Of a DNA stretch of 64,000 nucleotides, positions 2,127-43,299 are shown one piece after another. The stretch comes from Eutreptiella sp. 'Long Island Sound 2002' (lineage: Eukaryota; Protista; Euglenida). Location: positions 165,664,001 to 165,728,000 of the forward strand of contig OZ038378.1 in the NCBI GenBank assembly GCA_964036045.1, read 5' to 3'. Position 1 is the first letter of the stretch; the number at the start of each line of letters is the position of its first letter. The translations under genes and the position numbers were made by a program. The notes beneath the pieces are model-generated. The model was not told the origin of the DNA. It worked only from the letters and a program-made list of their open reading frames with translations, and did not search any database.

Positions 2127-3174
2127 AGCAAGCAAGCGTTAAGAGACTCCTCAGGTTCTCTTAAAGAACGTACCGAGGAGCCCCTGGGTAACCTAAACAA
2201 GGTTTACCGTGCGCAATTCGCGTGGCCTACCCTTTAATGCATCATGTGCACACAGGGAAGGGAGGCTTAACCATATCCACACTGACTCAACCAGGAGGTG
2301 AGCTCCTCCTGGGCTAACCTACCTTACTCACCATGCATCGTGTGAATGCCGAAGTAAAGCGAACACAAAACAAGCCTAAGCGTTTTAAGCAACCCTACTT
2401 TAACGCCACGGCCACACACGAACAAACGCTTTCTTTACTTACCTGTGGAGAAGAAAAAAAGGGTGAATTTGGGGTACAGGTAAAGCGTCACAGCGTGTGA
2501 ATGCCACGATTAGGCACATGCATGGCGAGCACAGCGCATATACTAACCCTACGTGCGCGCTGCGCGCTCCATTCGCATCGCATACCTTTCATTCCTGTGC
2601 AGACCTGTGCAGAGCACGAGGAGGAACACCCGACCCCCCAACGAACACAGCGTTGACAACCCTAACGTTTTGACGAAACAACCAACACGAACACAATGCA
2701 TGCGTGTGAGACGACACTGACATACCTGAGAGGTGGGTTGTTGACCTGCTCTGTGGTGTGGGTTGAATTTGAAGACTTTTCTCTAAAGTTTATAAAAATT
2801 TTGATGCAACTGTGCAAAAATTTCCTTTAGAACTTTAAAAACTACGGCTCATACCTTCTTTTTCAAAAGCCGTTTACGCTTGCGCAACCCTTTTCTTGGA
2901 GTCCGCTTCCTTTGCGCTTGTCTGCGACTTTGAGTTATGTGTAAAAATGACGATTTCCCGCGTGGTTTCGTGGATTTTTAACGATTTCACTTGCTAAATC
3001 GCAACCCCTTCCGCTAAACCGCAGGAATCACTCCCTGCTGGTTACATTTTCTTTTTTTTCCAGCTCCTGGAGGTTTGTGTCCTCCATTGGGAGTATTGCT
3101 CCGCCCTGGCCCCTGGACAGGACGTATACTAAAACGCTGTTTATACAGCAATGGCCGTCCGCATTAGAGCGTTG

Positions 3175-3240
3175 ACTGTACCCTAGTGGGCAAGCATATG
3201 TGCTCTAGGGAGGGAGTCCTGGGTTCAAACCCCGCTACCC
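3175..3240 (+). other. tRNA-derived (SINE-head-like) remnant
   Basis: TAGTGG near 3184 and GGGTTCAAACC at 3221-3231 give A/B-box-like spacing. No convincing cloverleaf. Confidence 0.3.
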
Positions 3241-5007
3241 CCAAACTTTTTCCGAAGGTTTTCGTCGCACGCCGGCGACTTTTGAGGAATGCCCCATCGA
3301 AGGGACATCATTCACGGTACATTACACTGTTTTTCAAGGGTACCTACAGTGTGATAGGCTTCTATGAAGTGATGAGGATGTTTTTGGTAAGTTTAATGCA
3401 TTTTCTGAGGTAATTTTGGGAATATTTGAGCCTTTTTCCTTGGTCCTACTGGCTTAGCTAACTAGTACTCCAGGGGGGAGTAAGAAAAAGTCACTGCCAT
3501 GTCTTTCTTGGAGGGCTTGATCCAGGCCAAGCCCCCCTTAAAACCCTTTTGTTGATGCTAAGACAAACTTAAGTGTTTTTATCTCTCTTTTGTTGCCTAA
3601 AGTACACTTTCTCAAAGTAACTAGGGTTGTGACCCTAGCCCCCCATGAAGTTCACCCCTACCACTCAACTGAGCGGAGGTACCTTCCTTCATTAAGGATA
3701 TACCGAAATAAAATAGGCATTTCATGCTTTAGGCCTTGGAGGTTAAGCCTAGTGGTCTCCCACCCCAAGACCCCCATACTCAATTGTTTCTACCACTTAT
3801 TGTGGTCCTACTTTGTAACTGTTTTTGAATTCAGTTGCTTGGCCAAGTCATTTTCTGTGCGGTCCTGACATCTATGCCCCACATTCCTAACCAGCACCAT
3901 TTCACCCAAAAGAGTGCACATGAAGTGCCTAATGCTATCTCTGAGGCAAGAGTCAGACCAATTTTCATATAAAATCTTTTGTATTATGCTTTTGTGATTG
4001 AATCTTTGTGTATAAACCTGCTTTGTCTATTTGCAGCCCTTTTGTGTTACACTGGATTCCAAAACCAATCATTGATTCGATCCACATCCTGTTCTTCCTC
4101 TACTTGCTGCTTTGGTTTGGGTTTTCAACTACAAAACCTGCAGGATTTCATCAAAATATCTAGGGCATAAATCAAGGACATCTTTCCACCCTCGCTGATA
4201 TGGCACAAAGAGAAGGTCAAAATATAGTGGCACAAGTGGAAAGAGTGCCCTTTGTGAATCAAAAGCACCCCGAAAAGAAGTGCGAAACGATGCAGCAGCG
4301 ACTCTCTGTTCAAAGACCGCGTGGAAAATCTGCCCGTGCCATAGATGAAGCCGGAGACCAACAGGTACAAAAATTGTCACGACCTCGGACGGATCACGTA
4401 CGCACATCAACTTGGAGATTGTGGAGTTTTGTAAAGGCTTGAGGGTAGAATTGGTTATTACCGTCCCCAAATCTTACTGATTGCATGCAACCCCTTGATA
4501 GAACAATGTTCAGAAGTCTGAAAAGCAAATTCAGGATGATAAAGAGTTTGCCCCGCCAGGTTTGTGCAATTTTTCAATAAGGCTTGGACACAAGCAGCGT
4601 AACCTGTCAATAATATTTATGTGGCCTCTTAATTTTGATTGGAAATATTTTGGCCTTGAAGCGTGAATACATCCGTGTACTTTTTTTCTGAACCGAAATA
4701 TATGTAATTACCCGGTACAGCTTCAGGAACTCTAGGTACTAGTTGAATTGCCCACAACAAACACCAAAATCTTTCTTCCCCTACATATGTCAGTTTGACC
4801 CAATGGTTCGTTATCGCGTTGTTCCTTCCGCTACTGTGGGCTAATGCGCCTGCAGTAGTGTGCCTTTGCACCCCCTTGGCCTTTTGCGAAATTCACATGT
4901 TTGTGTCTATGCTACTCATTGCTTGATGTTGACGGATAACCTTTATGTATGGGAAGGTCTGGACGTTCCATTTCCCTCCCTTCTCCTTCCCTGAGCTCCT
5001 AGTCCCA

Positions 5008-5224
5008 GGCATAAAACCACTCCCAAATGGGGGATAAAACCACCCTGGGTGGTTTCATGCCCACTTTTAAGGGGGATATAACCACCCCTGTTGCGGGATA
5101 AAACCACCCATTTGAGGGGATAACCCCGGCCCCCAAAGGGGGGGATAAAACCACCCCCAGGGGTCAAAAATGGCCAGGGGGGGGGGGGGGCTGGTTTTAT
5201 CCCCCATTTGGAGGGTTTTATACC
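5008..5224. repeat. Foldback/MITE-like element with subterminal GGGGGATAAAACCACCC-type repeats
   Basis: Perfect 19-bp inverted repeat: CCAAATGGGGGATAAAACC (5023-5041) and GGTTTTATCCCCCATTTGG (5193-5211). It extends imperfectly outward. Confidence 0.7.
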
Positions 5225-8200
5225 CACGACCAAGCTCCCTTCTGTGCGCACTGCAGCCAGCCTGGGCAACGTGAAGAATCATTCTCATTGTGCACAAAGG
5301 TCCGCGACCAACAGTGGTAGCAACCAACAGCTTGGGAACAACTGGGGAAAACCAGAGTGTTCTCCCATTTGCACAAAAGGCCACTGGTTAGCACCCACAA
5401 AACAAATGGGCATAAACAGATAACTGATGGAACACTGAATTGGCCAGAACTGATGGGGAATGCAACCCAGAAATTGCAATGAAGCACAAAAAAAAGGACG
5501 TTCCATTTCTAGTGAAAAAGAGAGGACACAACAGACAAATGTGTGACACACAACACACATACACATCGGTTGTTTTCGGCTGCCCTGGTGTAGGCTACCC
5601 TTCAAAAAAATGTGGGAGCATGCAGGAATATGTGGGAATATGCATAACCCCCCCCCACCCTCCCCAGCTTTATGGGATCTAATTTGCCGCGGCCTGAATC
5701 GTTCCTGGTGTCCCTTGACATGCGTCCTTATTCAGCTCCCCCACACTACCTTCCCAACTACGGTCCCAATCCAGTCTCGATTAGGTTAAGGGCCCACCCA
5801 TCCACCAGTTCCCATTGGTACGACATCCTACACAATTTCGATAACAGCCCTTTGCCCCCCCCCCCCCCCAAACACAAATCGAGCATGGCACAGAACATAC
5901 ACCTCCTGTTGCCACTGTTGCAGTGTGTCAAGTCGAGGATTGGACAAACTGGGGGTAACCTTGGACAAACTGATGTGAACTCCATCGAGTGAGGGGGTTG
6001 CAAAAGCTGGCATTGCAATTTGGCTTTCTTTTGAGTGCACAACAACACCAAGAGATATCTTTCTTCAGCACAATACAGTAAAGTGGGTTAGGCAAAATGG
6101 AAAGGTTGATTTACGGTCAGAGCAATCAACCATTGACAATGTGCTAAGGGAGCACAATCCAAAACAAATATCAAGGCAATGCAGCTCCAGGGCACGCGAG
6201 GCTTTGTGTGGTGCACTCACAAAATGGGTGAACACACAGCACATAGAAAAATGCAATCCGACAAGGCTCAGTGCCCAGTGCAGATCCACTAAACAAATGT
6301 CTACCTGCAGTGTAGTCGCAGGAAACACTGCCTGACACCCGATTAACAGTTGCAGAATATTGGATGCAATGGCTCTTACCCCCACGCCTCCCTTCTGGCA
6401 GAGGAAGGAGGGGAAAAAGGATGGACCCGTGACCCAATAGGTTTTGTTTTGCCCCCGTGGCCCCTCACGTTGGGCAAAAACTGGGAAGTCCTCCCTGCCA
6501 GAAACCCCAACCACTCTGAAATGCACTACAATAAAAATATGAAATGCATGGCCCACAGCAGTGGGTTGGCGAAACGGAGATACCCTGGTCAGACCCAGTC
6601 ACTACATGGTACCCGAGGCTGAAAATGTGAGGATGCACTGTGCAAAAAGTCACTGCACAGCAGAGCACATCAAACAATAGAACACCAGTGAGCCGGTCTC
6701 CTGTTACCCTGAAACTTGGCCGTATTGTAACAGGTCAGGGGACAGTAAAGACCCGGCAGACAATCTGATGGATATCTCATAACATCATAATATAAGCAGT
6801 TTTCCTGCCACAAAGGGGAAATTGGCGGAAATGTCCACAGAAACACCACCACTCTAATTTGGATAGTGCAGCTTTCGGGTGATGAGGCATGTGTGTCACT
6901 TGTGGATGCATACATTGTCCCGTTTGGGTTCCAAGGGATTCAACATTCAAGCACCAACCCCTGAACCTCATTTTTAGGGCTCTGACGATCCAAAGGCTCT
7001 TGGGTGACACTCGTACTCTGAGTGAAGGGGTCAGGCAAATTGGGAGGGGGGCTGAGATAGAGTCACTGAGGAGAATTCAAACAAAAGGGAAATCCCCCTT
7101 GCTGCACGGAGGCCTGCTGTGCTGCTAGTGCCTGCCTACCTTCGAAAAGGGCATACATTACACTAAAATGTTACCTCCTCTGACACGCATGCGTGGTGCA
7201 ATTTCAGCACCCTAATTGGGTTTATTGGGTGGAAACTTAGTTTATTTCCATTGATGGCATCCACGGGACAAGAATTTGTATGGAACGGTCATAGAAACAG
7301 TGTTTGGTGGTTGTTCAGGGGTTTGCCCAACACAAGTGACACACAATTGTTCTACAGCCATGTCCGGGGCGGATGGTGCGCTGTGCACACTTTTACCCCT
7401 TTTCACACCATTTGCACCCACCTTCACTGCTTCTTGTCCTTTGTGAGTGGAGATTGGATTATGACGAGGGGAATCACGTGACAACTAGTATATTCATGAC
7501 GCAGACAAGACTGATCAGTGTTTGGGTGGGCATTGATATTGAGTTCAAAGACGTACAACCAGATATCTATCAAGAGGTCATGGGTGGAGTGCCCATGCAG
7601 GGGGCACTTGGTACAATGATATCCCCTGGATCTGTCATCACAGCTTAGGTGGACCGGGGTGGCGTAACAGGTTTGCATGCAACAAAGGTCTCCTCCAATC
7701 CAAAGACCTCATCCCTTAGGTGCCGATGGTTGCAGCTGCCCACACTCTCCACCAAGGAGGCCATTCGCTTTAGATAGAAACAGAGCCATGGCTCTCACGG
7801 CCCAAGAAGCGCACAAGGAAGATGGAGCACCTAACATGGGGAACATGAGGTGGTCCAATGAGCAATCTGGATACAGCTGGAAATGGCCAGACTGTTCATA
7901 TTGGATTGCCACACAGTCTGGGGTGGATGATGGGCTCACAATGGCGGTGAGCACACGCTTAATCATAGTGCCTCGCAGATAGAAGACACCACTGCCGAGC
8001 TCCAATAGTTCAAAATTCATTGACACATGAGCTATTGAGGAGAGGGAGGCAACATGCTGCAACGTTAAACTTTTGTTCATATGCATGCATCCATCATGCC
8101 CAAATACCCAAAAATAATGCCCCTCATGAGTGTCTTACATGTACAAATAGCTGTATTAGCATCACCCAACCATTGCATTCAGTGTTCACCACCAACTTTT

Positions 8201-36680: not shown

Positions 36681-36866
36681 TTTTGAAGTACCCCCCCCCC
36701 TTTGTAATAGCTACGCAAAAGTACCAAATTAATACGGTCCCTACGCCGACTGTAGCTTAGACAAGGGCGTGGCTTGTGCACAACACATACAACTACCGAC
36801 ACACACGTGGGTGAGTGCATGGTATGAGTGCACCTTAACCTCCGCCCACATTCCCAAAGGCATGAA

Positions 36867-36924
36867 AACCTGAAGTTTCATGTTTCAAACCCAAGAAAGG
36901 GTTTGAAACATGAAACTTCAGGTT
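36867..36924. repeat. Perfect 26-bp inverted repeat with 6-nt loop
   Basis: AACCTGAAGTTTCATGTTTCAAACCC-aagaaa-GGGTTTGAAACATGAAACTTCAGGTT. Confidence 0.95.
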
Positions 36925-37254
36925 CACACCCATGTTCCTACAAGCAATGAGGCATGAGAAGCCTACAAATGTTCGGCTTGGAAACCCTTCTTGCAATCAT
37001 ACACCATGCGGAACAACTCCACATGCTCACTACTTGAAGATGCCTTTGAAGATGCCTTTGCCTGAGGTTTAGGGGCTGGTTTGGGCTCAGGCAACTTCAA
37101 GTTCTCGGGAATGAAATTGCCTTGCATGTGGTCTCTTGTCAAGTACACTCACAACCCTATGTAAGTGGCAAATTCGTCACAAAACCCATGTCTTGGGTGG
37201 CTGCACTACATTTGGTATCAAATTAAAATTAGGTACCAAATTAATACGGTCCCT

Positions 37255-37272
37255 ACGCCTACTGTAGCTTGG
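37255..37272. repeat. Target-site duplication, left copy (ACGCCTACTGTAGCTTGG)
   Basis: Identical 18-mer at 43227-43244; its 15-nt core also occurs at 40702-40716. Confidence 0.9.
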
Positions 37273-40200
37273 CCATAGAGCAGTGGAAAGTTCAGCAATA
37301 GGTCCCCACCGACAGACCTATGCCCTCAATCAGCAAGTATCACGCGGCGGAGCCGCGGCACACATGGTCCCATCTGTCCAGCGAAGCGCCACAGCCCTTC
37401 CTCGGATACGGCGCCGGAGGCGCCGCCACAGTTCTTCTGAATAGGTCAGGTCGCCCTCCCTACCCTCAGCAGGAACTGGGTTGAGCTGTCTGGTGCCTCC
37501 GAGCTGAAAATAAAACCACCCCCCGTGTCGACCACTATGATGAACCCCCAGCGGCCTGTCCGCCGGGTTTCGAACCCACGACCCATGCCGTGGGAGACAG
37601 GCGTGTTTCCAATATGCTACTGTCCGATGTGCTGTGTACCGGCCGTTTCAACCACCAAGTCATTCCCCCCCCTGGAGCCCCACGGCTGACGCTGCGGTTT
37701 GCACTTAGCGTAGACCTTCAAAACCCAAATCGACCGTGGAGGTCGACCCCCGGCAGCGTGTCCGCCGCCTTTGCCACCAAACGTGGCACGTCGTGGGAGC
37801 CACGCGCGTTTCTGGTATGCTCCTCCCCTATTACATGTCACCGTCCAACGGGATTTGTACCGACCGTAGGAACCACCGGGTCTCTCCCCCCCCCCCCGCC
37901 GACCCCAGCGGTTGCTGCTGCGGTGTGCACTTAGTGGAGACCTTCAAGGCTCAAATGCCCGGCTGTGTGTCCGCCGCCTTCGCCACCGACCGTGGCTTGG
38001 GAGCCGCGCGTGTTTCTGGTATGCTCCTCCCACGTTGTTGCCCCGTGCTCCAGAGGCGCCACTGGCGCCCCTCCGCCTCAGGACTCGATCCCCCCCCGCC
38101 GCCTCTTCCTGCTCTCACTCACGTCCGTACTGAACCCATCAATGTCACTGTCCCACGTCCCCTGCAACCGCGTGTCATTGACATCGGTACTAAATGACAC
38201 GTCTTCGGAACTCTACAGAAAAACGTCTTCGTCGCCCGACGTCAATGACGCGGCCGAACTGCCGCTTGACGTCCCCCCAGAGTCCACCTCTGACCCCAGG
38301 TCCCGGTCGGACACTTCTGCCATGGGTTCCAGCCCCAACGCATCCCACTCCGTGACTCGGCGTCGTTTGGACAGGGGCAGCAGGTTATAGGGGTGCAGTT
38401 CCCGGCCCTGCCCCGCTAGTTCATCGGCTGCCTCATTACCGGCCACCCCGAGGTGCGATGGCACCCAGCGGACCTGTAACTTGTCCCCCGCCTCCCCGCG
38501 AAGCCAATCAATGTGCTCCCACAAGTCCCTATGCCCTACCTCCCCTGACGAAGTGCGCCACCCGTGCCTCTTCCACTTGTCTGTCCACACTGTGATAGCC
38601 TTAAAAATATATTCGGAATCCACCACCACCACCACCATCCGCTCCCCCGCCTCCCGACTGAGCATCGCATGTAGCACCCCTCGCAACTCCCCCCTACTGA
38701 TACTCTGTCGCTCATGAGGTGGCACGTGCGCCCGAAGATTACGACTACCGTTGTCCCCGAACCAGACCCCATACCCCGCTTGCATCCAACCCCGGACGCA
38801 TTTCGCCGAACCATCCGTGTACACTACCACCCACCCCTCACCCGACATTCTCTCCAGCTTCGCCAACAAAGATCGTTTGTGGCTACCCCACTTTTCCTCC
38901 TTTAACTTCAGCGGGTCTGGTCGCGCTGACGGCAGCTTGGCCGTCGTGGGCAAAAGGGTCCGTCGCTTCGCCCACTGCAACGACCAATTATCCATCGGGG
39001 GGGTCGCCGGGACCGCAAAATTGGGTTCGTACATCCCCACCACCCTCAAAGCCGATTCCTCATAGATGGCACGCCATGTGGGGGCCACCGTGCCTAACAG
39101 CTGGGGTGGTATCTTGGACCCCGAGATGAGGTCACACCAGCGCAGCACCCCCCTCAGGTGCAGTGCCGGGCAGTAGTAGGTCAACCAAACCTTATTACGA
39201 AAAAACACGCAGTGCCAAACGCCCAAGGACCACAATTCATGCAGGGTGCGCGCCCGCGCCAGCATTTTTGCGACCACGGGTGCGTATGCACCAGCCGTTG
39301 TCACATTACCCAACTGGATGCCCAGGTACTTGAGATGTTCCTTCACCGTCAACCCCGCCAACGTGGCCGGCCGTGGGGCATCCGGGTCCGAACACTTGAC
39401 TACCGCATATGTTTTCGAAAAATTGACCCTCAGGCCAGAGAAATACCCGAACACGTGCAACACATACAAAACCGCCCTCAGATCGGCCACGTGTTGCGGC
39501 CCCCGCCCCGGCAGCGCCAACAAAATATCATCCGCGTATAGCAACACCACCACGGTAACATGCAACCGTTTGAAATCAAAAATAAGCAGGACCGTTATCT
39601 GGTCAAAAAGCAAGGGGGATAGCGGGTCCCCCTGTCGGATGCCTGAGCGTGGGCTCAGCTCCACATCGGCCACAAAGCCCCTCCCCACACAAAATAAAAC
39701 GGGCCCCGCCGACACCGACATCAACAAGCCAACGTACGCCAGGGGCAACCCCAAGTGGATCAGGGTGACTCGCAACAAAGTGAAGGTTACCGAGTCATAG
39801 GCTTTCTGAAAATCTACCGCCACCATGATCTGGTCTGGCAGCCGCTCCCACTCTGCCCTGGCGTAGATTATATGATCCAACATCTGCCGCCCCGGCACGA
39901 AGCCCTTCTGACAGGGGGGGATCACCTGTGGCCACACGTCCGAGAGCTGTAACATCACCGTTGTGGTCACCCACTTCAGGCATACCTGCTGGAGGGCAAT
40001 GGGTCTCATATCTTTGGGCTGCTCCGCCCCACAAAACTCAGGCAGGCACCGCATCAGGGAGACCGACCACTCCGCCGGCACCCCCCCCACCCTGAGGAAC
40101 TCCTGCATGGCTGACAACAACCACGGGGCAAAAACAGACGGAAACGCCTGGTATAGCTCCGTTGGTATACCATCCTTACCCGGTGCCGATCCCCCTTTTA

Positions 40201-40701
40201 GCCGCTCGAGCGCTGCCAATACCACGTCCAGCGACAGTGGCTTCATAAGCAAAGGCAACGCCTGCAGGATCTTCGGGGGAATGGGAAGGGACCTTACATA
40301 CCGCCAACACTCCTCTTCGGTTACCGCGTTCCCCGCCATGACCCCCGGCCAATAGTCCCGCATAGCCTGTGTGATCGCCCGCACCCCGGTGTGTACCCCC
40401 CCCTGCGAGTCCCGAACTCGTGCCACGTGTTGTCGCTCTCGCAACTGCCGTACCAAGTTGTGGATGGTCCGTCGCCGGTTTGCCTGACCTTGGACTCGCA
40501 CCTCCCGCGGCTGTAACTGCCGCTTTAGCCTATCACACATATCCGATTTGAACATGGCCTCGCGCTGGTTCGCCAGCAGGGATACCAACAGCCCGTACCC
40601 CTCCCCCACTGTTCTCGGCGAATATCCCAGCTCCTCTAGGTAGTCCAGTGCCCCCACCGCTAGTTTTACCGGGGTGCTCTCGCGTACCAGGCTATGCAGT
40701 T
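37273..40701 (-). mobile_element. Non-LTR retrotransposon copy A (L1/Tx1-like), 5'-truncated, with internal in-frame deletions
   Basis: Flanked by CCTACTGTAGCTTGG on both sides; carries RT + RNase H ORF; 3' UTR homologous to copy B; no poly(A). Confidence 0.92.
38213..40657 (-). CDS. Non-LTR reverse transcriptase + RNase H1 (partial ORF2, copy A)
   Basis: APGKDGIP, RPIAL, QKGFVPGR, DFQKAYDSV, GIRQGDPLSPLLF, YADD, YLG. RNase H motifs YTDGSA, RGELRG, VDSEY, WVPSH, GNEAADELA. Confidence 0.93.
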   Translation of the reverse strand: MGALDYLEELGYSPRTVGEGYGLLVSLLANQREAMFKSDMCDRLKRQLQPREVRVQGQANRRRTIHNLVRQLRERQHVARVRDSQGGVHTGVRAITQAMRDYWPGVMAGNAVTEEECWRYVRSLPIPPKILQALPLLMKPLSLDVVLAALERLKGGSAPGKDGIPTELYQAFPSVFAPWLLSAMQEFLRVGGVPAEWSVSLMRCLPEFCGAEQPKDMRPIALQQVCLKWVTTTVMLQLSDVWPQVIPPCQKGFVPGRQMLDHIIYARAEWERLPDQIMVAVDFQKAYDSVTFTLLRVTLIHLGLPLAYVGLLMSVSAGPVLFCVGRGFVADVELSPRSGIRQGDPLSPLLFDQITVLLIFDFKRLHVTVVVLLYADDILLALPGRGPQHVADLRAVLYVLHVFGYFSGLRVNFSKTYAVVKCSDPDAPRPATLAGLTVKEHLKYLGIQLGNVTTAGAYAPVVAKMLARARTLHELWSLGVWHCVFFRNKVWLTYYCPALHLRGVLRWCDLISGSKIPPQLLGTVAPTWRAIYEESALRVVGMYEPNFAVPATPPMDNWSLQWAKRRTLLPTTAKLPSARPDPLKLKEEKWGSHKRSLLAKLERMSGEGWVVVYTDGSAKCVRGWMQAGYGVWFGDNGSRNLRAHVPPHERQSISRGELRGVLHAMLSREAGERMVVVVVDSEYIFKAITVWTDKWKRHGWRTSSGEVGHRDLWEHIDWLRGEAGDKLQVRWVPSHLGVAGNEAADELAGQGRELHPYNLLPLSKRRRVTEWDALGLEPMAEVSDRDLGSEVDSGGTSSGSSAASLTSGDEDVFL

Positions 40702-41009
40702 CCTACTGTAGCTTGGCCATATAACAGTGGAAAGTTCAGCAATAGGTCCCCACCGACAGACCTATGCCCTCAATCAGCAAGTATCACGCGGCGGAGCCGC
40801 GGCAAACATTGTCCCATCTGTCCAGCGAAGCGCCACAGCTCTCCTTCGGATACGGCGCCGGAGGCGCCGCCACAGTTCTTCTGAATAGGTCAGGTCGCCC
40901 TCCCTACCCTCAGCAGGAGCTGGGTTGAGCAGACAGGTACCTCCGAGACGAAAATAAAACCACCCCCCGTGTCGACCACTATGATGAACCCCCAGCGACC
41001 TGTCCGCCG

Positions 41010-41063
41010 GGTTTCGAACCCACGACCCATGACGTGGGAGACAAGCGTGTTTCCGATATGCTA
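41010..41063 (-). promoter_or_regulatory. tRNA-type (Pol III type 2) A-box/B-box pair in the LINE 3' UTR; also in copy A at 37566-37619
   Basis: TAGCATATCGG (41053-41063) and GGTTCGAAACC (41010-41020). The T8-to-T54 equivalents are 45 nt apart, against ~46 in a canonical tRNA. Confidence 0.6.
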
Positions 41064-41297
41064 CTGTCCGATGTGCTGTGTACCGGCCGCGGAAACCACC
41101 AGGTCTCTCCCCCCCCCACCGGCGCCAGCGGTTGCTGCTGCGGTGTGCACTTAGTGCAGACCTCCAAGGCGGAAATGCCCGGTGGCGTGCCCGTCGACCT
41201 CGCCACCGACCGTGGCTTGGGAGTCACGCGTGTTTCTGGTATGCTCCTCCCCCGTTGTTGCCCCGTGCTCCAGAGGCGCCACTGGCGCCCCTCCGCC

Positions 41298-43022
41298 TCA
41301 GGACTCGATCCCCCCCCGCCGCCTCTTCCTGCTCTCACTCACGTCCGTACTGAACCCATCAATGTCACTGTCCCACGTCCCCCGCAACCGCGTGTCACTG
41401 ACATCCGTACTGAATGACATGTCTTCCGAGCTGGACAGAAAAACGTCTTCGTCGTCCGACGTTGACGATGTGGTCGAACTGCCGCTTGACATCCCCCCAG
41501 AGTCCACCTCTGACCCCAGGTCCCGGTCGGACACTTCTGCCATGGGCTCCAGCCCCAATGCATCCCACTCCGTGACTCGGCGTCGTTTGGACAGGGGCAG
41601 CAGGTTATAGGGGTGCAGTTCCCGGCCCTGCCCTGCTAGTTCATCGGCTGCCTCATTACCGGCCACCCCGAGGTGCGATGGCACCCAGCGGACCTGTAAC
41701 TTGTCCCCCGCCTCCCCGCGAAGCCAATCAATGTGCTCCCACAAGTCTCTGTGCCCCACCTCCCCTGACGAAGTGCGCCACCCGTGCCTCTTCCACTTGT
41801 CCGTCCACACAGTGATAGCCTTAAAAATGTATTCGGAATCCACCACCACCACCATCCGCTCCCCCGCCTCCCGACTGAGCATCGCATGTAGCACCCCTCG
41901 CAACTCCCCCCTGCTGATACTCTGTCGCTCATGAGCTGGCACGTGTGCCCGAAGATTACGACTACCGTTGTCCCCGAACCAGACCCCGTACCCTGCTTGC
42001 ATCCAACCCCGGACGCGTTTCGCCGAGCCATCCGTATACACTACCACCCACCCCTCACCCGACATTCTCTCCAGCTTCGCCAACAAAGATCGTTTGTGGC
42101 TACCCCACTTTTCCTCCTTTAACTTCAGCGGGTCTGGTCGCGCTGACGGCAGCTTGGCCGTCGTGGGGGCTTGGGGCGCCCTGTGGAACATCGTCTTATG
42201 GTCCGCCCAGCTGTGGAGCTGTGCTATCAAATGGCGCAGATCGACTCGACTGCACGACATGTTGCGCTCCCCCCTCCAGATTTCCAACACACCCACCCAA
42301 ACAGCTACAAACTCCTCCAACGAAACCTGCCGACGCTGATACTTTACCTCGCACCGCAGCTTCCACTGCGCACGCAGGCCCGCCCACAAAACGAGGCCCT
42401 GCGTTGTCTGCAGCGATAGCAGAGGTTCCTCCAGCAGAAGCCTGCTGGGCTCCACTGCTCCCCCCCCCCCCTGCGCCAGGCCAAACGCCTTTCTCACCGT
42501 ATCAAACATAAATGCCGAGAAGTAGCATCGCTTCAGCGTGTGCGCGTGGTCCTCCACCCGCCCGCACTGTGGACACAGTTTGCCCCCCAGCCGCTCCATG
42601 CGAGCACCAACTGGCAGCTTACGCCACAGAACCCTCCGTATAAAATCCAAATCCCATTTGGGGAGGTGTAGGCACCCAAACACACGCCAAACTTCCTTAG
42701 GCTGACGGGCCTCGTGGCGCGTGCGCTGCTGCATGGCCAAAAGGGTCCGTCGCTTCGCCCACTGCAACGACCAATTATCCATCGGGGGGGTCGCCGGGAC
42801 CGCAAAATTGGGTTCGTACATCCCCACCACCCTCAAAGCCGATTCCTCATAGATGGCACGCCATGTGGGGGCCACCGTGCCTAACAGCTGGGGTGGTATC
42901 TTGGACCCCGAGATGAGGTCACACCAGCGCAGCACCCCCCTCAGGTGCAGTGCCGGGCAGTAGTAGGTCAACCAAACCTTATTACGAAAAAACACGCAGT
43001 GCCAAACGCCCAAGGACCACAA
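41298..43022 (-). CDS. C-terminal ORF2 of copy B: CCHC zinc knuckle, RNase H1, acidic tail
   Basis: CPQCGRVEDHAHTLKRC (CX2CX7HX4C), then the full RNase H motif set and a D/S/E-rich tail. Confidence 0.9.
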   Translation of the reverse strand: MWSLGVWHCVFFRNKVWLTYYCPALHLRGVLRWCDLISGSKIPPQLLGTVAPTWRAIYEESALRVVGMYEPNFAVPATPPMDNWSLQWAKRRTLLAMQQRTRHEARQPKEVWRVFGCLHLPKWDLDFIRRVLWRKLPVGARMERLGGKLCPQCGRVEDHAHTLKRCYFSAFMFDTVRKAFGLAQGGGGAVEPSRLLLEEPLLSLQTTQGLVLWAGLRAQWKLRCEVKYQRRQVSLEEFVAVWVGVLEIWRGERNMSCSRVDLRHLIAQLHSWADHKTMFHRAPQAPTTAKLPSARPDPLKLKEEKWGSHKRSLLAKLERMSGEGWVVVYTDGSAKRVRGWMQAGYGVWFGDNGSRNLRAHVPAHERQSISRGELRGVLHAMLSREAGERMVVVVDSEYIFKAITVWTDKWKRHGWRTSSGEVGHRDLWEHIDWLRGEAGDKLQVRWVPSHLGVAGNEAADELAGQGRELHPYNLLPLSKRRRVTEWDALGLEPMAEVSDRDLGSEVDSGGMSSGSSTTSSTSDDEDVFLSSSEDMSFSTDVSDTRLRGTWDSDIDGFSTDVSESRKRRRGGIES

Positions 43023-43299
43023 TTCATGCAGGGGGGGGGGAGCCGGTGCCCCCCCCCCCCCCCCGCCGAACCACCGAGTACGCCTTCACTGTACCCTGCA
43101 AAAAGGTAGGCTTGGGCAGATAGGCTTGGCTGGCTAGCTGCAGATAGGGAAGAAACGCCGGTTCCAGCACCAACCCCACGCGGTCGGCCCACCCCTGGAA
43201 CGGCCGCGCATGTTGTTCTGCCAACGACGCCTACTGTAGCTTGGACAAGGGCGTGGCTATTACAGGGGGGGGGGGCGTAGCAAGGAGCGTATGGCCCGC

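What the first reader, a model, noticed from the sequence alone, without database searches (positions are those of the whole stretch)
37255..43244. Apparently sequence-specific non-LTR retrotransposon: two successive insertions at the same nucleotide with nested TSDs
Seen: CCTACTGTAGCTTGG occurs at 37258-37272, 40702-40716 and 43230-43244, exactly bracketing copies A and B. The outer pair extends to 18 bp. Both copies have their 3' end at the same position of the motif and have no poly(A). Known: Tx1-clade L1-group elements are sequence-specific and can stack in tandem. Inference: B inserted first (18-bp TSD), then A re-targeted the regenerated site (15-bp TSD), which points to a target-specific LINE family with an uncharacterised target.
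Basis: partly seen in the sequence, partly recalled or inferred. Interest (0 to 1): 0.82.

Follow-up and report, generated by a model that had tools for sequence, protein, structure and literature searches.

The report
MITE-targeting LINE stacked twice
Two broken copies of a jumping gene (a LINE) sit head to tail at one exact base inside a small cut-and-paste transposon; across the genome this LINE nearly always lands at that 15-base site, a habit already known from frog and crocodilian Tx1 elements but seen here in a euglenid alga.

Summary
CCTACTGTAGCTTGG occurs exactly three times and brackets two minus-strand, poly(A)-less LINE copies. A is 37273-40701 and B is 40717-43229.

The core reading, a target-specific LINE, is strongly supported across the genome.
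- The family is about 7.0 kb, with ORF1 and an ORF2 carrying APE nuclease, RT and RNase H.
- It has 691 recognisable 3' ends. At least 545 abut CCAAGC(T/A)AC.
- 10,391 uninterrupted copies of the site exist.
- Full-length and variably 5'-truncated copies all carry the same 15-bp duplication.

The "uncharacterised target" is position 35-49 of a roughly 595-bp, TA-flanked inverted-repeat element (a MITE). In the window this MITE spans 36691-43277.

- The outer "18-bp TSD" is 15 bp plus CGT. That CGT is B's own sequence at its truncation point, so the TSDs are serial, not nested.
- The insertion order is unresolved. A looks older, if anything.

Tx1-clade membership is not shown. RNase H is present, the host is a euglenid, and the clade is unresolved.

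The closest analogues are Tx1L/Tx1D and crocodilian Tx1-Mar/SINEU-3 in Mariner-N4_AMi.

The scan had already noted MITE-targeting LINEs elsewhere in this genome (s1-197876, s1-219446). This is a new member of a known kind.

The parts
36689..36690 (.). TA flank (target duplication) of the host MITE, right end
   Evidence: Read directly. TA/TA flanks occur in 8 of 17 other full MITE copies.
36691..37257 (-). Host MITE: body and right terminal inverted repeat (poly-C/G + TTGTAATAGCTACGC)
   Evidence: Same about 595-bp element in 18 other loci. This side of the target continues the LINE's 3' flank in 27 of 30 sampled copies.
36746..36760 (-). Second, empty target-like site of the same MITE (CTAAGCTACAGTCGG in element sense)
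   Evidence: The C-to-T change at position 2 is common in empty sites and absent from 35 of 35 occupied sites.
37258..37272 (-). 15-bp target duplication, 3'-most copy in element sense
37273..40701 (-). LINE copy A. It is 5'-truncated and corresponds to positions 2717-6968 of a 6,968-bp full-length copy. It has private deletions of 473 and 568 bp and an extra 3'-UTR repeat. It belongs to the A-type subfamily.
   Evidence: The ORF at 38213-40657 carries RVT_1 and RNase_H.
40702..40716 (-). 15-bp target duplication, middle copy between B and A
40717..43229 (-). LINE copy B. It is a plain 5'-truncated copy covering positions 4454-6968 and is 97.2% identical to the full-length copy.
   Evidence: The ORF at 41298-43022 carries RNase_H. 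The CGT at its 5' end is LINE sequence.
43230..43244 (-). 15-bp target duplication, 5'-most copy
43245..43277 (-). Host MITE left end: terminal inverted repeat plus CTTGT
   Evidence: The same left end precedes the 15-mer at the 5' junction of full-length copies L085-L087 and of about 20 truncated copies.
43278..43279 (.). TA flank of the host MITE, left end

Best explanation
**What it is.** A family of about 7.0-kb non-LTR retrotransposons. Each has ORF1 and an ORF2 with an APE-type endonuclease, reverse transcriptase, a Cys/His motif and RNase H. There is no poly(A), and the 3' end is fixed at …CTATGG. The family inserts site-specifically into a 15-bp sequence, CCAAGCTACAGTAGG in element sense. 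That sequence lies 34 bp inside the left end of an abundant, roughly 595-bp, TA-flanked inverted-repeat element (a MITE). A second copy of the sequence lies near the MITE's right end.

**How it works (inferred mechanism).**
1. The element's nuclease nicks the bottom strand exactly at the 5' edge of the 15-mer (…GCTTGG^ACAAGGG).
2. The freed 3' end primes reverse transcription of the LINE RNA.
3. The top strand is cut 15 bp downstream (…GTAGG^CGTAGGG).
4. Every insertion is therefore flanked by a 15-bp duplication, which regenerates the site on both sides.

**This window.** One MITE (36691-43277) received two independent 5'-truncated insertions of two subfamilies. The result is MITE-left – 15 – B – 15 – A – 15 – MITE-right.

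**Shown.** Site specificity, the 15-bp TSD, empty sites, variable 5' truncation, recurrent stacking, and the requirement for C at position 2 of the site.

**Inferred.** The nuclease is what confers specificity. The stack arose by two sequential insertions. The order of those insertions is also inferred and remains unresolved.
For: **Element**
- APE motifs are present: NVNG, QETH, DHN, RID and SDH. Exo_endo_phos is a weak hit and RVT_1 is clear. RNase_H scores 1e-24.
- The closest solved structure is human L1 ORF2p, at 1e-28.
- A full-length copy is 6,968 bp.
- 5' truncations fall at many different positions.

**Specificity**
- 27 of 30 copies picked only by 3'-UTR similarity share the same flank.
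- Genome-wide there are 691 LINE 3' ends.
- 251 are followed by the 15-mer plus the MITE right flank.
- 10,391 intact LINE-free sites exist. All reversed-pattern controls gave 0.

**TSD**
- Three full-length copies at unrelated loci start right after MITE-left + 15-mer.
- About 20 truncated copies do the same.

**Sequence requirement**
- 35 of 35 occupied sites begin CCAAGC.
- 33 of 72 empty sites carry another base at position 1 or 2 (29 of them CTAAGC). Among loci picked by LINE similarity the figure is 5 of 19.

**Stacking**
- Other stacks occur in L011, L024 and L074.
- 10 of the first 100 perfect 3' ends lie in 4 same-strand clusters spaced by less than one element length.

**Independence of A and B**
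- They belong to different subfamilies.

**Precedent**
- Sequential tandem insertions sandwiching a 16-bp TSD in a mariner-type element are described for crocodilian SINEU-3/Tx1-Mar (PMC4494074).
Against: - No biochemical evidence shows that the nuclease itself is sequence-specific.
- Annealing of read-through RNA to the target could contribute to targeting or replace nuclease specificity.
These were not examined, and they may be mutated sites, rearrangements or off-target insertions.
- The tandem arrangement in this window was not checked against reads.
- A carries a 300-bp island (38947-39246) that is 99.7% identical to B and sits between two private deletions. This means gene conversion or a local assembly problem.
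- The insertion order is unresolved.
Confidence: 0.88

Rival explanations
1. The stack was made in one event or by recombination, not by two insertions. One route is reverse transcriptase jumping from one LINE RNA to a second RNA that carried the read-through 15-mer. Another is unequal exchange between two occupied MITEs at the 15-bp repeat.
For: - Every donor copy is followed by the 15-mer, so read-through transcripts would carry it.
- A is a mosaic with an island nearly identical to B, so the two copies have exchanged sequence at some time.
- All three 15-mers are identical, which fits either model.
Against: - A and B belong to different subfamilies and have different private divergence.
- The share of stacked ends, about 9-10%, is close to the share of sites that lie beside an existing LINE. 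That is what simple re-targeting predicts.
- 15 bp is short for homologous exchange.
- The literature on the crocodilian analogue favours sequential insertion (PMC4494074).
Confidence: 0.1
2. The 15-mer and the sequence beyond it belong to the LINE itself, as a long 3' tail or 3' transduction. On this view the 'TSD' is only the element's terminus repeated.
For: The homology of the 3' flanks runs far beyond the 15-mer in most copies.
Against: - 10,391 sites have the 15-mer between MITE-left and MITE-right with no LINE (examples).
- The MITE has its own inverted repeats and TA flanks.
- LINE 5' junctions carry MITE-left + 15-mer.
- The same LINE also sits in a second, related repeat with a variant site, CCAAGCAAC….
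Confidence: 0.01
3. The tandem arrangement in this window is an assembly artefact.
For: - Repeats of this kind are hard to assemble.
- A contains a 300-bp stretch almost identical to B, flanked by two deletions seen in no other sampled copy.
Against: - A and B differ by 6-9% elsewhere and in structure.
- Junctions are base-exact and match the rule seen at many other loci.
Confidence: 0.03

Closest known systems
Tx1L inserted in Tx1D, Xenopus laevis (Garrett et al. 1989; Christensen et al. 2000; as summarised in PMC1950540 and PMC4494074)
   Same: - An APE-type LINE of about 7 kb with two ORFs.
- It inserts at one defined sequence inside a non-autonomous DNA transposon, giving composite elements.
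- For Tx1L, the specificity is attributed to a sequence-specific endonuclease.
   Different: - The host is a euglenid, not an animal.
- The target is a TA-flanked MITE, whereas Tx1D is called piggyBac-type in PMC4494074.
- ORF2 here has an RNase H domain. By my own knowledge Tx1 lacks one.
- The clade was not determined.
Tx1-Mar LINEs and SINEU-3 in Mariner-N4_AMi, crocodilians (Kojima 2015, PMC4494074)
   Same: - The target is a mariner-type (TA) non-autonomous transposon.
- The TSD is about 16 bp and defined.
- Tandem insertions sandwich a TSD and are read as sequential events.
- Several related families share one target.
   Different: - The crocodilian insertions are ancient and eroded.
- Here copies are 95-99% alike and full-length copies survive.
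- The host kingdom and domain set (RNase H) differ.
R1-clade site-specific LINEs (R1Bm in 28S rDNA; TRAS/SART at telomeric repeats), summarised in PMC1950540 and PMC1919474
   Same: - An APE nuclease makes specific cuts on both strands.
- The element has an exact 3' end without poly(A).
- The TSD is defined.
   Different: - The target is a transposon, not a host multicopy gene.
- There is no evidence of relationship to the arthropod R1 clade.
ingi/L1Tc of trypanosomatids (from my own knowledge)
   Same: - They are Euglenozoan LINEs with APE, RT and RNase H.
- They show some insertion-site preference.
   Different: - Those elements show a loose upstream motif, not a single base-exact site in a transposon.
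- Relationship was not tested, because no reference sequences were available here.

Membership tests
APE-type non-LTR retrotransposon (LINE) | ORF2 with an apurinic-endonuclease-like domain and a reverse transcriptase | tested here: met
   RVT_1 scores 7.8e-23. Exo_endo_phos scores 0.0012, below the Pfam cut-off. The catalytic motifs are readable, and the alignment to L1-type ORF2 runs over residues 33-869.
APE-type non-LTR retrotransposon (LINE) | No LTRs, variable 5' truncation, fixed 3' end, target-site duplication | tested here: met
Site-specific LINE | Most copies are inserted at the same nucleotide of a repeated target, and uninterrupted targets exist | tested here: met
   545 of 691 3' ends lie at CCAAGCWAC. 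There are 10,391 empty sites. Kojima's criterion is more than 20% of flanks (PMC4494074).
Tx1 clade (L1 group) | RT groups with Tx1 references in a phylogeny (RTclass1/Repbase) | not testable with these tools
   No labelled Tx1 reference was obtainable. The best named distant hits are vertebrate L1-type ORF2s at about 24% identity. Other hits are unnamed or mixed.
Tx1 clade (L1 group) | ORF2 architecture APE-RT-CCHC without RNase H (from my own knowledge) | tested here: not met
   RNase_H (PF00075) scores 1e-24 to 1e-25 downstream of RT in both window copies.
Tx1 clade (L1 group) | Found in animals (PMC4494074) | tested here: not met
   The genome carries 5,458 copies of a 24-nt sequence that I recalled as the Euglena spliced leader, against 0 in the control. 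The host is a euglenid by inference.
TA-flanked MITE (Tc1/mariner-like non-autonomous DNA transposon) | Terminal inverted repeats, TA duplication, small size, high copy number | tested here: met
   The inverted repeats are about 27 bp. TA/TA flanks occur in 8 of 17 copies and in the window's copy. The element is about 595 bp and has thousands of copies.
TA-flanked MITE (Tc1/mariner-like non-autonomous DNA transposon) | An autonomous partner encoding a matching transposase | not tested
   Not searched for.

The most novel reading that the evidence does not exclude
A LINE lineage outside the animal Tx1 clade (APE-RT-RNase H, euglenid host) evolved base-exact targeting of a MITE independently. 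One nuclease would recognise two similar half-sites, TTGG^ACAAGGG on the bottom strand and TAGG^CGTAGGG on the top strand, 15 bp apart. A single C-to-T change next to the first nick would be enough to protect a site.
Probability: 0.35. Interest if true: 0.55.

Novelty: new member of a known kind. Interest (0 to 1): 0.42.

Why it matters
Site-specific LINEs show how a retrotransposon can multiply without damaging its host, by landing in other selfish DNA. Their nucleases are also studied as natural tools for targeted integration.

This family offers three things:
- a young and abundant example outside animals, with full-length copies still present;
- about 10,000 natural target variants;
- a clear single-base discrimination between CCAAGC and CTAAGC sites, which makes the specificity directly testable.

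The habit itself is not new. The same scan had already met it elsewhere in this genome. The held paper library has no paper combining Euglena with target-specific non-LTR retrotransposons.

Tried and rejected
- **Known RNAs.** Rfam found only weak microRNA-like hits on the MITE's own hairpin. ARAGORN found no tRNA gene.
- **3'-terminal RNA structure.** Folding the last 80 nt gave a z-score of -0.4, so no structure is claimed.
- **Clade placement.**
  - The word-based protein search gave only 4 hits.
  - The protein atlas gave only generic APE/RT clusters.
  - The full HMMER search gave 113 hits below 1e-30, and most were unnamed.
  - Name look-ups showed vertebrate L1-type, plant, and one 'type-1 retrotransposable element' label. 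The clade is left open.
- **Fetching longer genomic stretches.** The full-length copy was pieced together from overlapping loci of one natural copy on C19.
- **c18 as a copy truncated at position 157.** Rejected. It carries a 212-bp insertion with an 18-bp duplication there.
- **Christensen et al. 2000 (PMC85248).** The paper is not held.
- **Earlier notes by sequence.** The search returned nothing.
Full report
**1. The observation**

The 15-mer CCTACTGTAGCTTGG occurs exactly three times on the + strand, at 37258, 40702 and 43230. A 2-mismatch copy lies at 36746. Shuffles give 0.07 matches at that tolerance.

The stretch between the copies is C-rich on the + strand, and the coding sense is on the minus strand. 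An 814-aa ORF at 38213-40657 carries RVT_1 and RNase_H. A 574-aa ORF at 41298-43022 carries RNase_H.

In element sense the layout is 15-mer – B (43229→40717) – 15-mer – A (40701→37273) – 15-mer. Both copies end …CTATGG directly against the motif and have no poly(A). The outer pair does extend to 18 bp.

**2. The host genome**

The window lies on contig C1 of a 2.28-Gb eukaryotic assembly. Earlier notes of this scan called the genome Euglena-like.

I tested that lead with a 24-nt sequence that I recalled as the Euglena spliced leader. It occurs 5,458 times, against 0 for the reversed control. The host is therefore a euglenid by inference. It is not human.

**3. The element family**

A search with A's last 288 bp found over 1,200 first-look candidates. 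The 40 scored hits were 95-98% identical.

Overlapping loci of one natural copy on C19 give a full-length element of 6,968 bp.
- ORF1 is 538 aa and has no Pfam match.
- ORF2 starts with an APE-type nuclease. The motifs NVNG, QETH, DHN, RID and SDH are readable. The Pfam hit is weak.
- The RT domain follows.
- Next comes a Cys/His motif, which I read by eye in the translation of B.
- RNase H is last.

The closest solved structure is human L1 ORF2p, at 1e-28. R2 proteins score about 1e-13.

B is a plain 5'-truncated copy covering positions 4454-6968, at 97.2% identity. A covers positions 2717-6968. It has two deletions (4177-4649 and 4950-5517) and an extra 3'-UTR repeat unit. No other sampled copy shares those deletions.

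**4. Is the 15-mer target or terminus?**

In 27 of 30 copies chosen only by 3'-UTR similarity, the flank beyond …CTATGG is the same for far more than 15 bp. That leaves two possibilities: a long LINE tail or a repeated target. Four results decide for a target.

(a) The flank is an independent element.
- It is a repeat of about 595 bp with roughly 27-bp terminal inverted repeats (a poly-C run followed by TTGTAATAGCCACGCC).
- It usually has TA on both sides and occurs in thousands of copies.
- The 15-mer sits at positions 35-49.
- A second, often slightly different copy sits near the right end, at positions 526-540.

(b) Uninterrupted sites are abundant. The sequence MITE-left – 15-mer – MITE-right occurs 10,391 times at up to 3 mismatches in 34, with 0 in the control.

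(c) LINE 5' junctions carry MITE-left + 15-mer.
- Three full-length copies at unrelated loci (L085, L086, L087) all begin GGTGGGCGC… immediately after it.
- About 20 copies truncated at different positions do the same.

(d) The window itself fits.
- 43245-43277 is the MITE's left inverted repeat, with TA at 43278-43279.
- 37257→36691 is the rest of the MITE, ending in the right inverted repeat, with TA at 36689-36690.

The three 15-mers are therefore one target sequence that has been duplicated twice.

**5. Strength of the specificity**

| Count | Number |
|---|---|
| LINE 3' ends, 24-mer at up to 2 mismatches | 691 |
| Followed by the 15-mer plus ten bases of the MITE's right side | 251 |

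All reversed-pattern controls gave 0.

About a fifth of the perfect matches listed carry the variant CCAAGCAAC. That variant belongs to a second, related repeat.

A related but distinct LINE family shares the last 55 nt at 93% identity and uses the same site with the same 15-bp duplication (L037).

In the sampled loci all 35 occupied sites begin CCAAGC. By contrast, 33 of 72 empty sites carry another base at position 1 or 2, and 29 of those read CTAAGC. Among loci picked by LINE similarity the figure is 5 of 19.

Insertions do occur in right-end sites when these read CCAAGC. The base next to the first nick therefore matters, and the position within the MITE does not. The window illustrates this. 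Its right-end site reads CTAAGC…, lies 500 bp away at 36746-36760, and is empty. Its CCAAGC site holds two LINEs.

**6. Mechanism**

What is shown is a fixed 3' junction, a 15-bp duplication and variable 5' ends. Most 5' junctions lie within a few bases of the end of the 15-mer, consistent with 0-3 nt of junction overlap or a few extra bases.

What I infer is target-primed reverse transcription:
1. A bottom-strand nick at …GCTTGG^ACAAGGG.
2. A top-strand nick 15 bp away at …GTAGG^CGTAGGG.

The two nick contexts agree at 8 of 11 positions when registered on the nicks. I read this directly from the sequence and estimate the chance probability at about 1e-3. One nuclease may therefore cut both strands, as R1Bm's does (PMC1919474). 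This remains a hypothesis.

**7. The stack and its order**

Each insertion regenerates the site, so stacking is expected.
- Other stacks occur in L011, L024 and L074.
- 10 of the first 100 perfect 3' ends lie in four tight same-strand clusters.

Other copies read …CAG-CGT-CGTTGG at B's truncation point. The CGT is therefore B's own sequence, and its match to the target is a 1-in-64 coincidence among about 27 junctions examined. No other junction gives clear evidence of a duplication longer than 15 bp.

A tree of the last 1.07 kb puts A and B in different subfamilies. Their private branches are 0.022 for A and 0.012 for B. That points weakly to A being older, which would mean that B entered the upstream copy of the site. 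The upstream copy is the one that keeps the whole first-nick context.

I regard the order as unresolved. A one-step origin by template jumping or by unequal exchange is a minor rival.

**8. Comparison with known systems**

Tx1L of Xenopus inserts at a defined sequence in the DNA transposon Tx1D and has a sequence-specific APE nuclease (PMC1950540, PMC4494074).

Crocodilian Tx1-Mar LINEs and SINEU-3 target the mariner-type element Mariner-N4_AMi with a 16-bp TSD. Tandem insertions "sandwiching a TSD" are read there as sequential events (PMC4494074). The present case works in the same way.

Membership in the Tx1 clade is not shown.
- RNase H is present.
- The host is not an animal.
- No labelled Tx1 reference could be obtained.

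The nearest named relatives are vertebrate L1-type ORF2s at about 24% identity. Other hits are unnamed or mixed. The clade is open.

**9. Novelty**

The held library has no paper combining Euglena with target-specific non-LTR retrotransposons. The kind of system is well known.

This scan's own earlier notes (s1-197876, s1-219446) already report MITE-targeting LINEs elsewhere in this genome. I could not check whether they describe the same family. Another first-reader note (s1-228192) pointed to the empty site at 36691-36775, and I confirm it.

Verdict: real, well supported, and a new member of a known kind.

Noticed in passing
window 38947-39246 (copy A) and 42734-43033 (copy B): A 300-bp island of A is 99.7% identical to B. 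The rest of A is 91-94% identical to B. The island lies exactly between A's two private deletions. This suggests gene conversion between neighbours, a recombinant template, or a local assembly problem.
   Followed up: partly
window 36867-36924: A perfect 26-bp hairpin with a 6-nt loop lies inside the MITE body. It is the source of the weak microRNA-like Rfam hits.
   Followed up: no
genome-wide (listings on C1-C5): LINE copies, and on C1 also the MITE target sites, cluster in the distal tens of Mb of the large contigs and are sparse in the middle.
   Followed up: no
L037 (minus strand) 388-1049: A 661-bp truncated copy of a different, related LINE family sits in the same site with the same 15-bp duplication. 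It is 72-93% identical in the 3' UTR and 93% identical over the last 55 nt.
   Followed up: partly
L026 about 1190-1320: About 130 bp of T/G-rich sequence of unknown origin lies between the 5' TSD and a truncated LINE copy. It may be untemplated or template-switched.
   Followed up: no
L030, L074, L081: The same LINE family also occupies a variant site, CCAAGCAACACT(A/G)(C/G)G, in a second related repeat with different flanks (CGTTGGTTC…). L081 also shows an inverted 41-bp 3'-end fragment abutting a truncated copy.
   Followed up: partly
window 37500-38010 and 40960-41260: The LINE 3' UTR contains repeated units with a T-arm-like GGTTCGAAACC motif and an internal near-copy of the target (CCAAGCCACGGTCGG). 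ARAGORN calls no tRNA.
   Followed up: no
G000 C18:28064188-28064400: A near-full-length copy carries a roughly 212-bp insertion in ORF1 flanked by an 18-bp duplication.
   Followed up: no
whole genome: A 24-nt sequence that I recalled as the Euglena spliced leader occurs 5,458 times and is dispersed on both strands.
   Followed up: no
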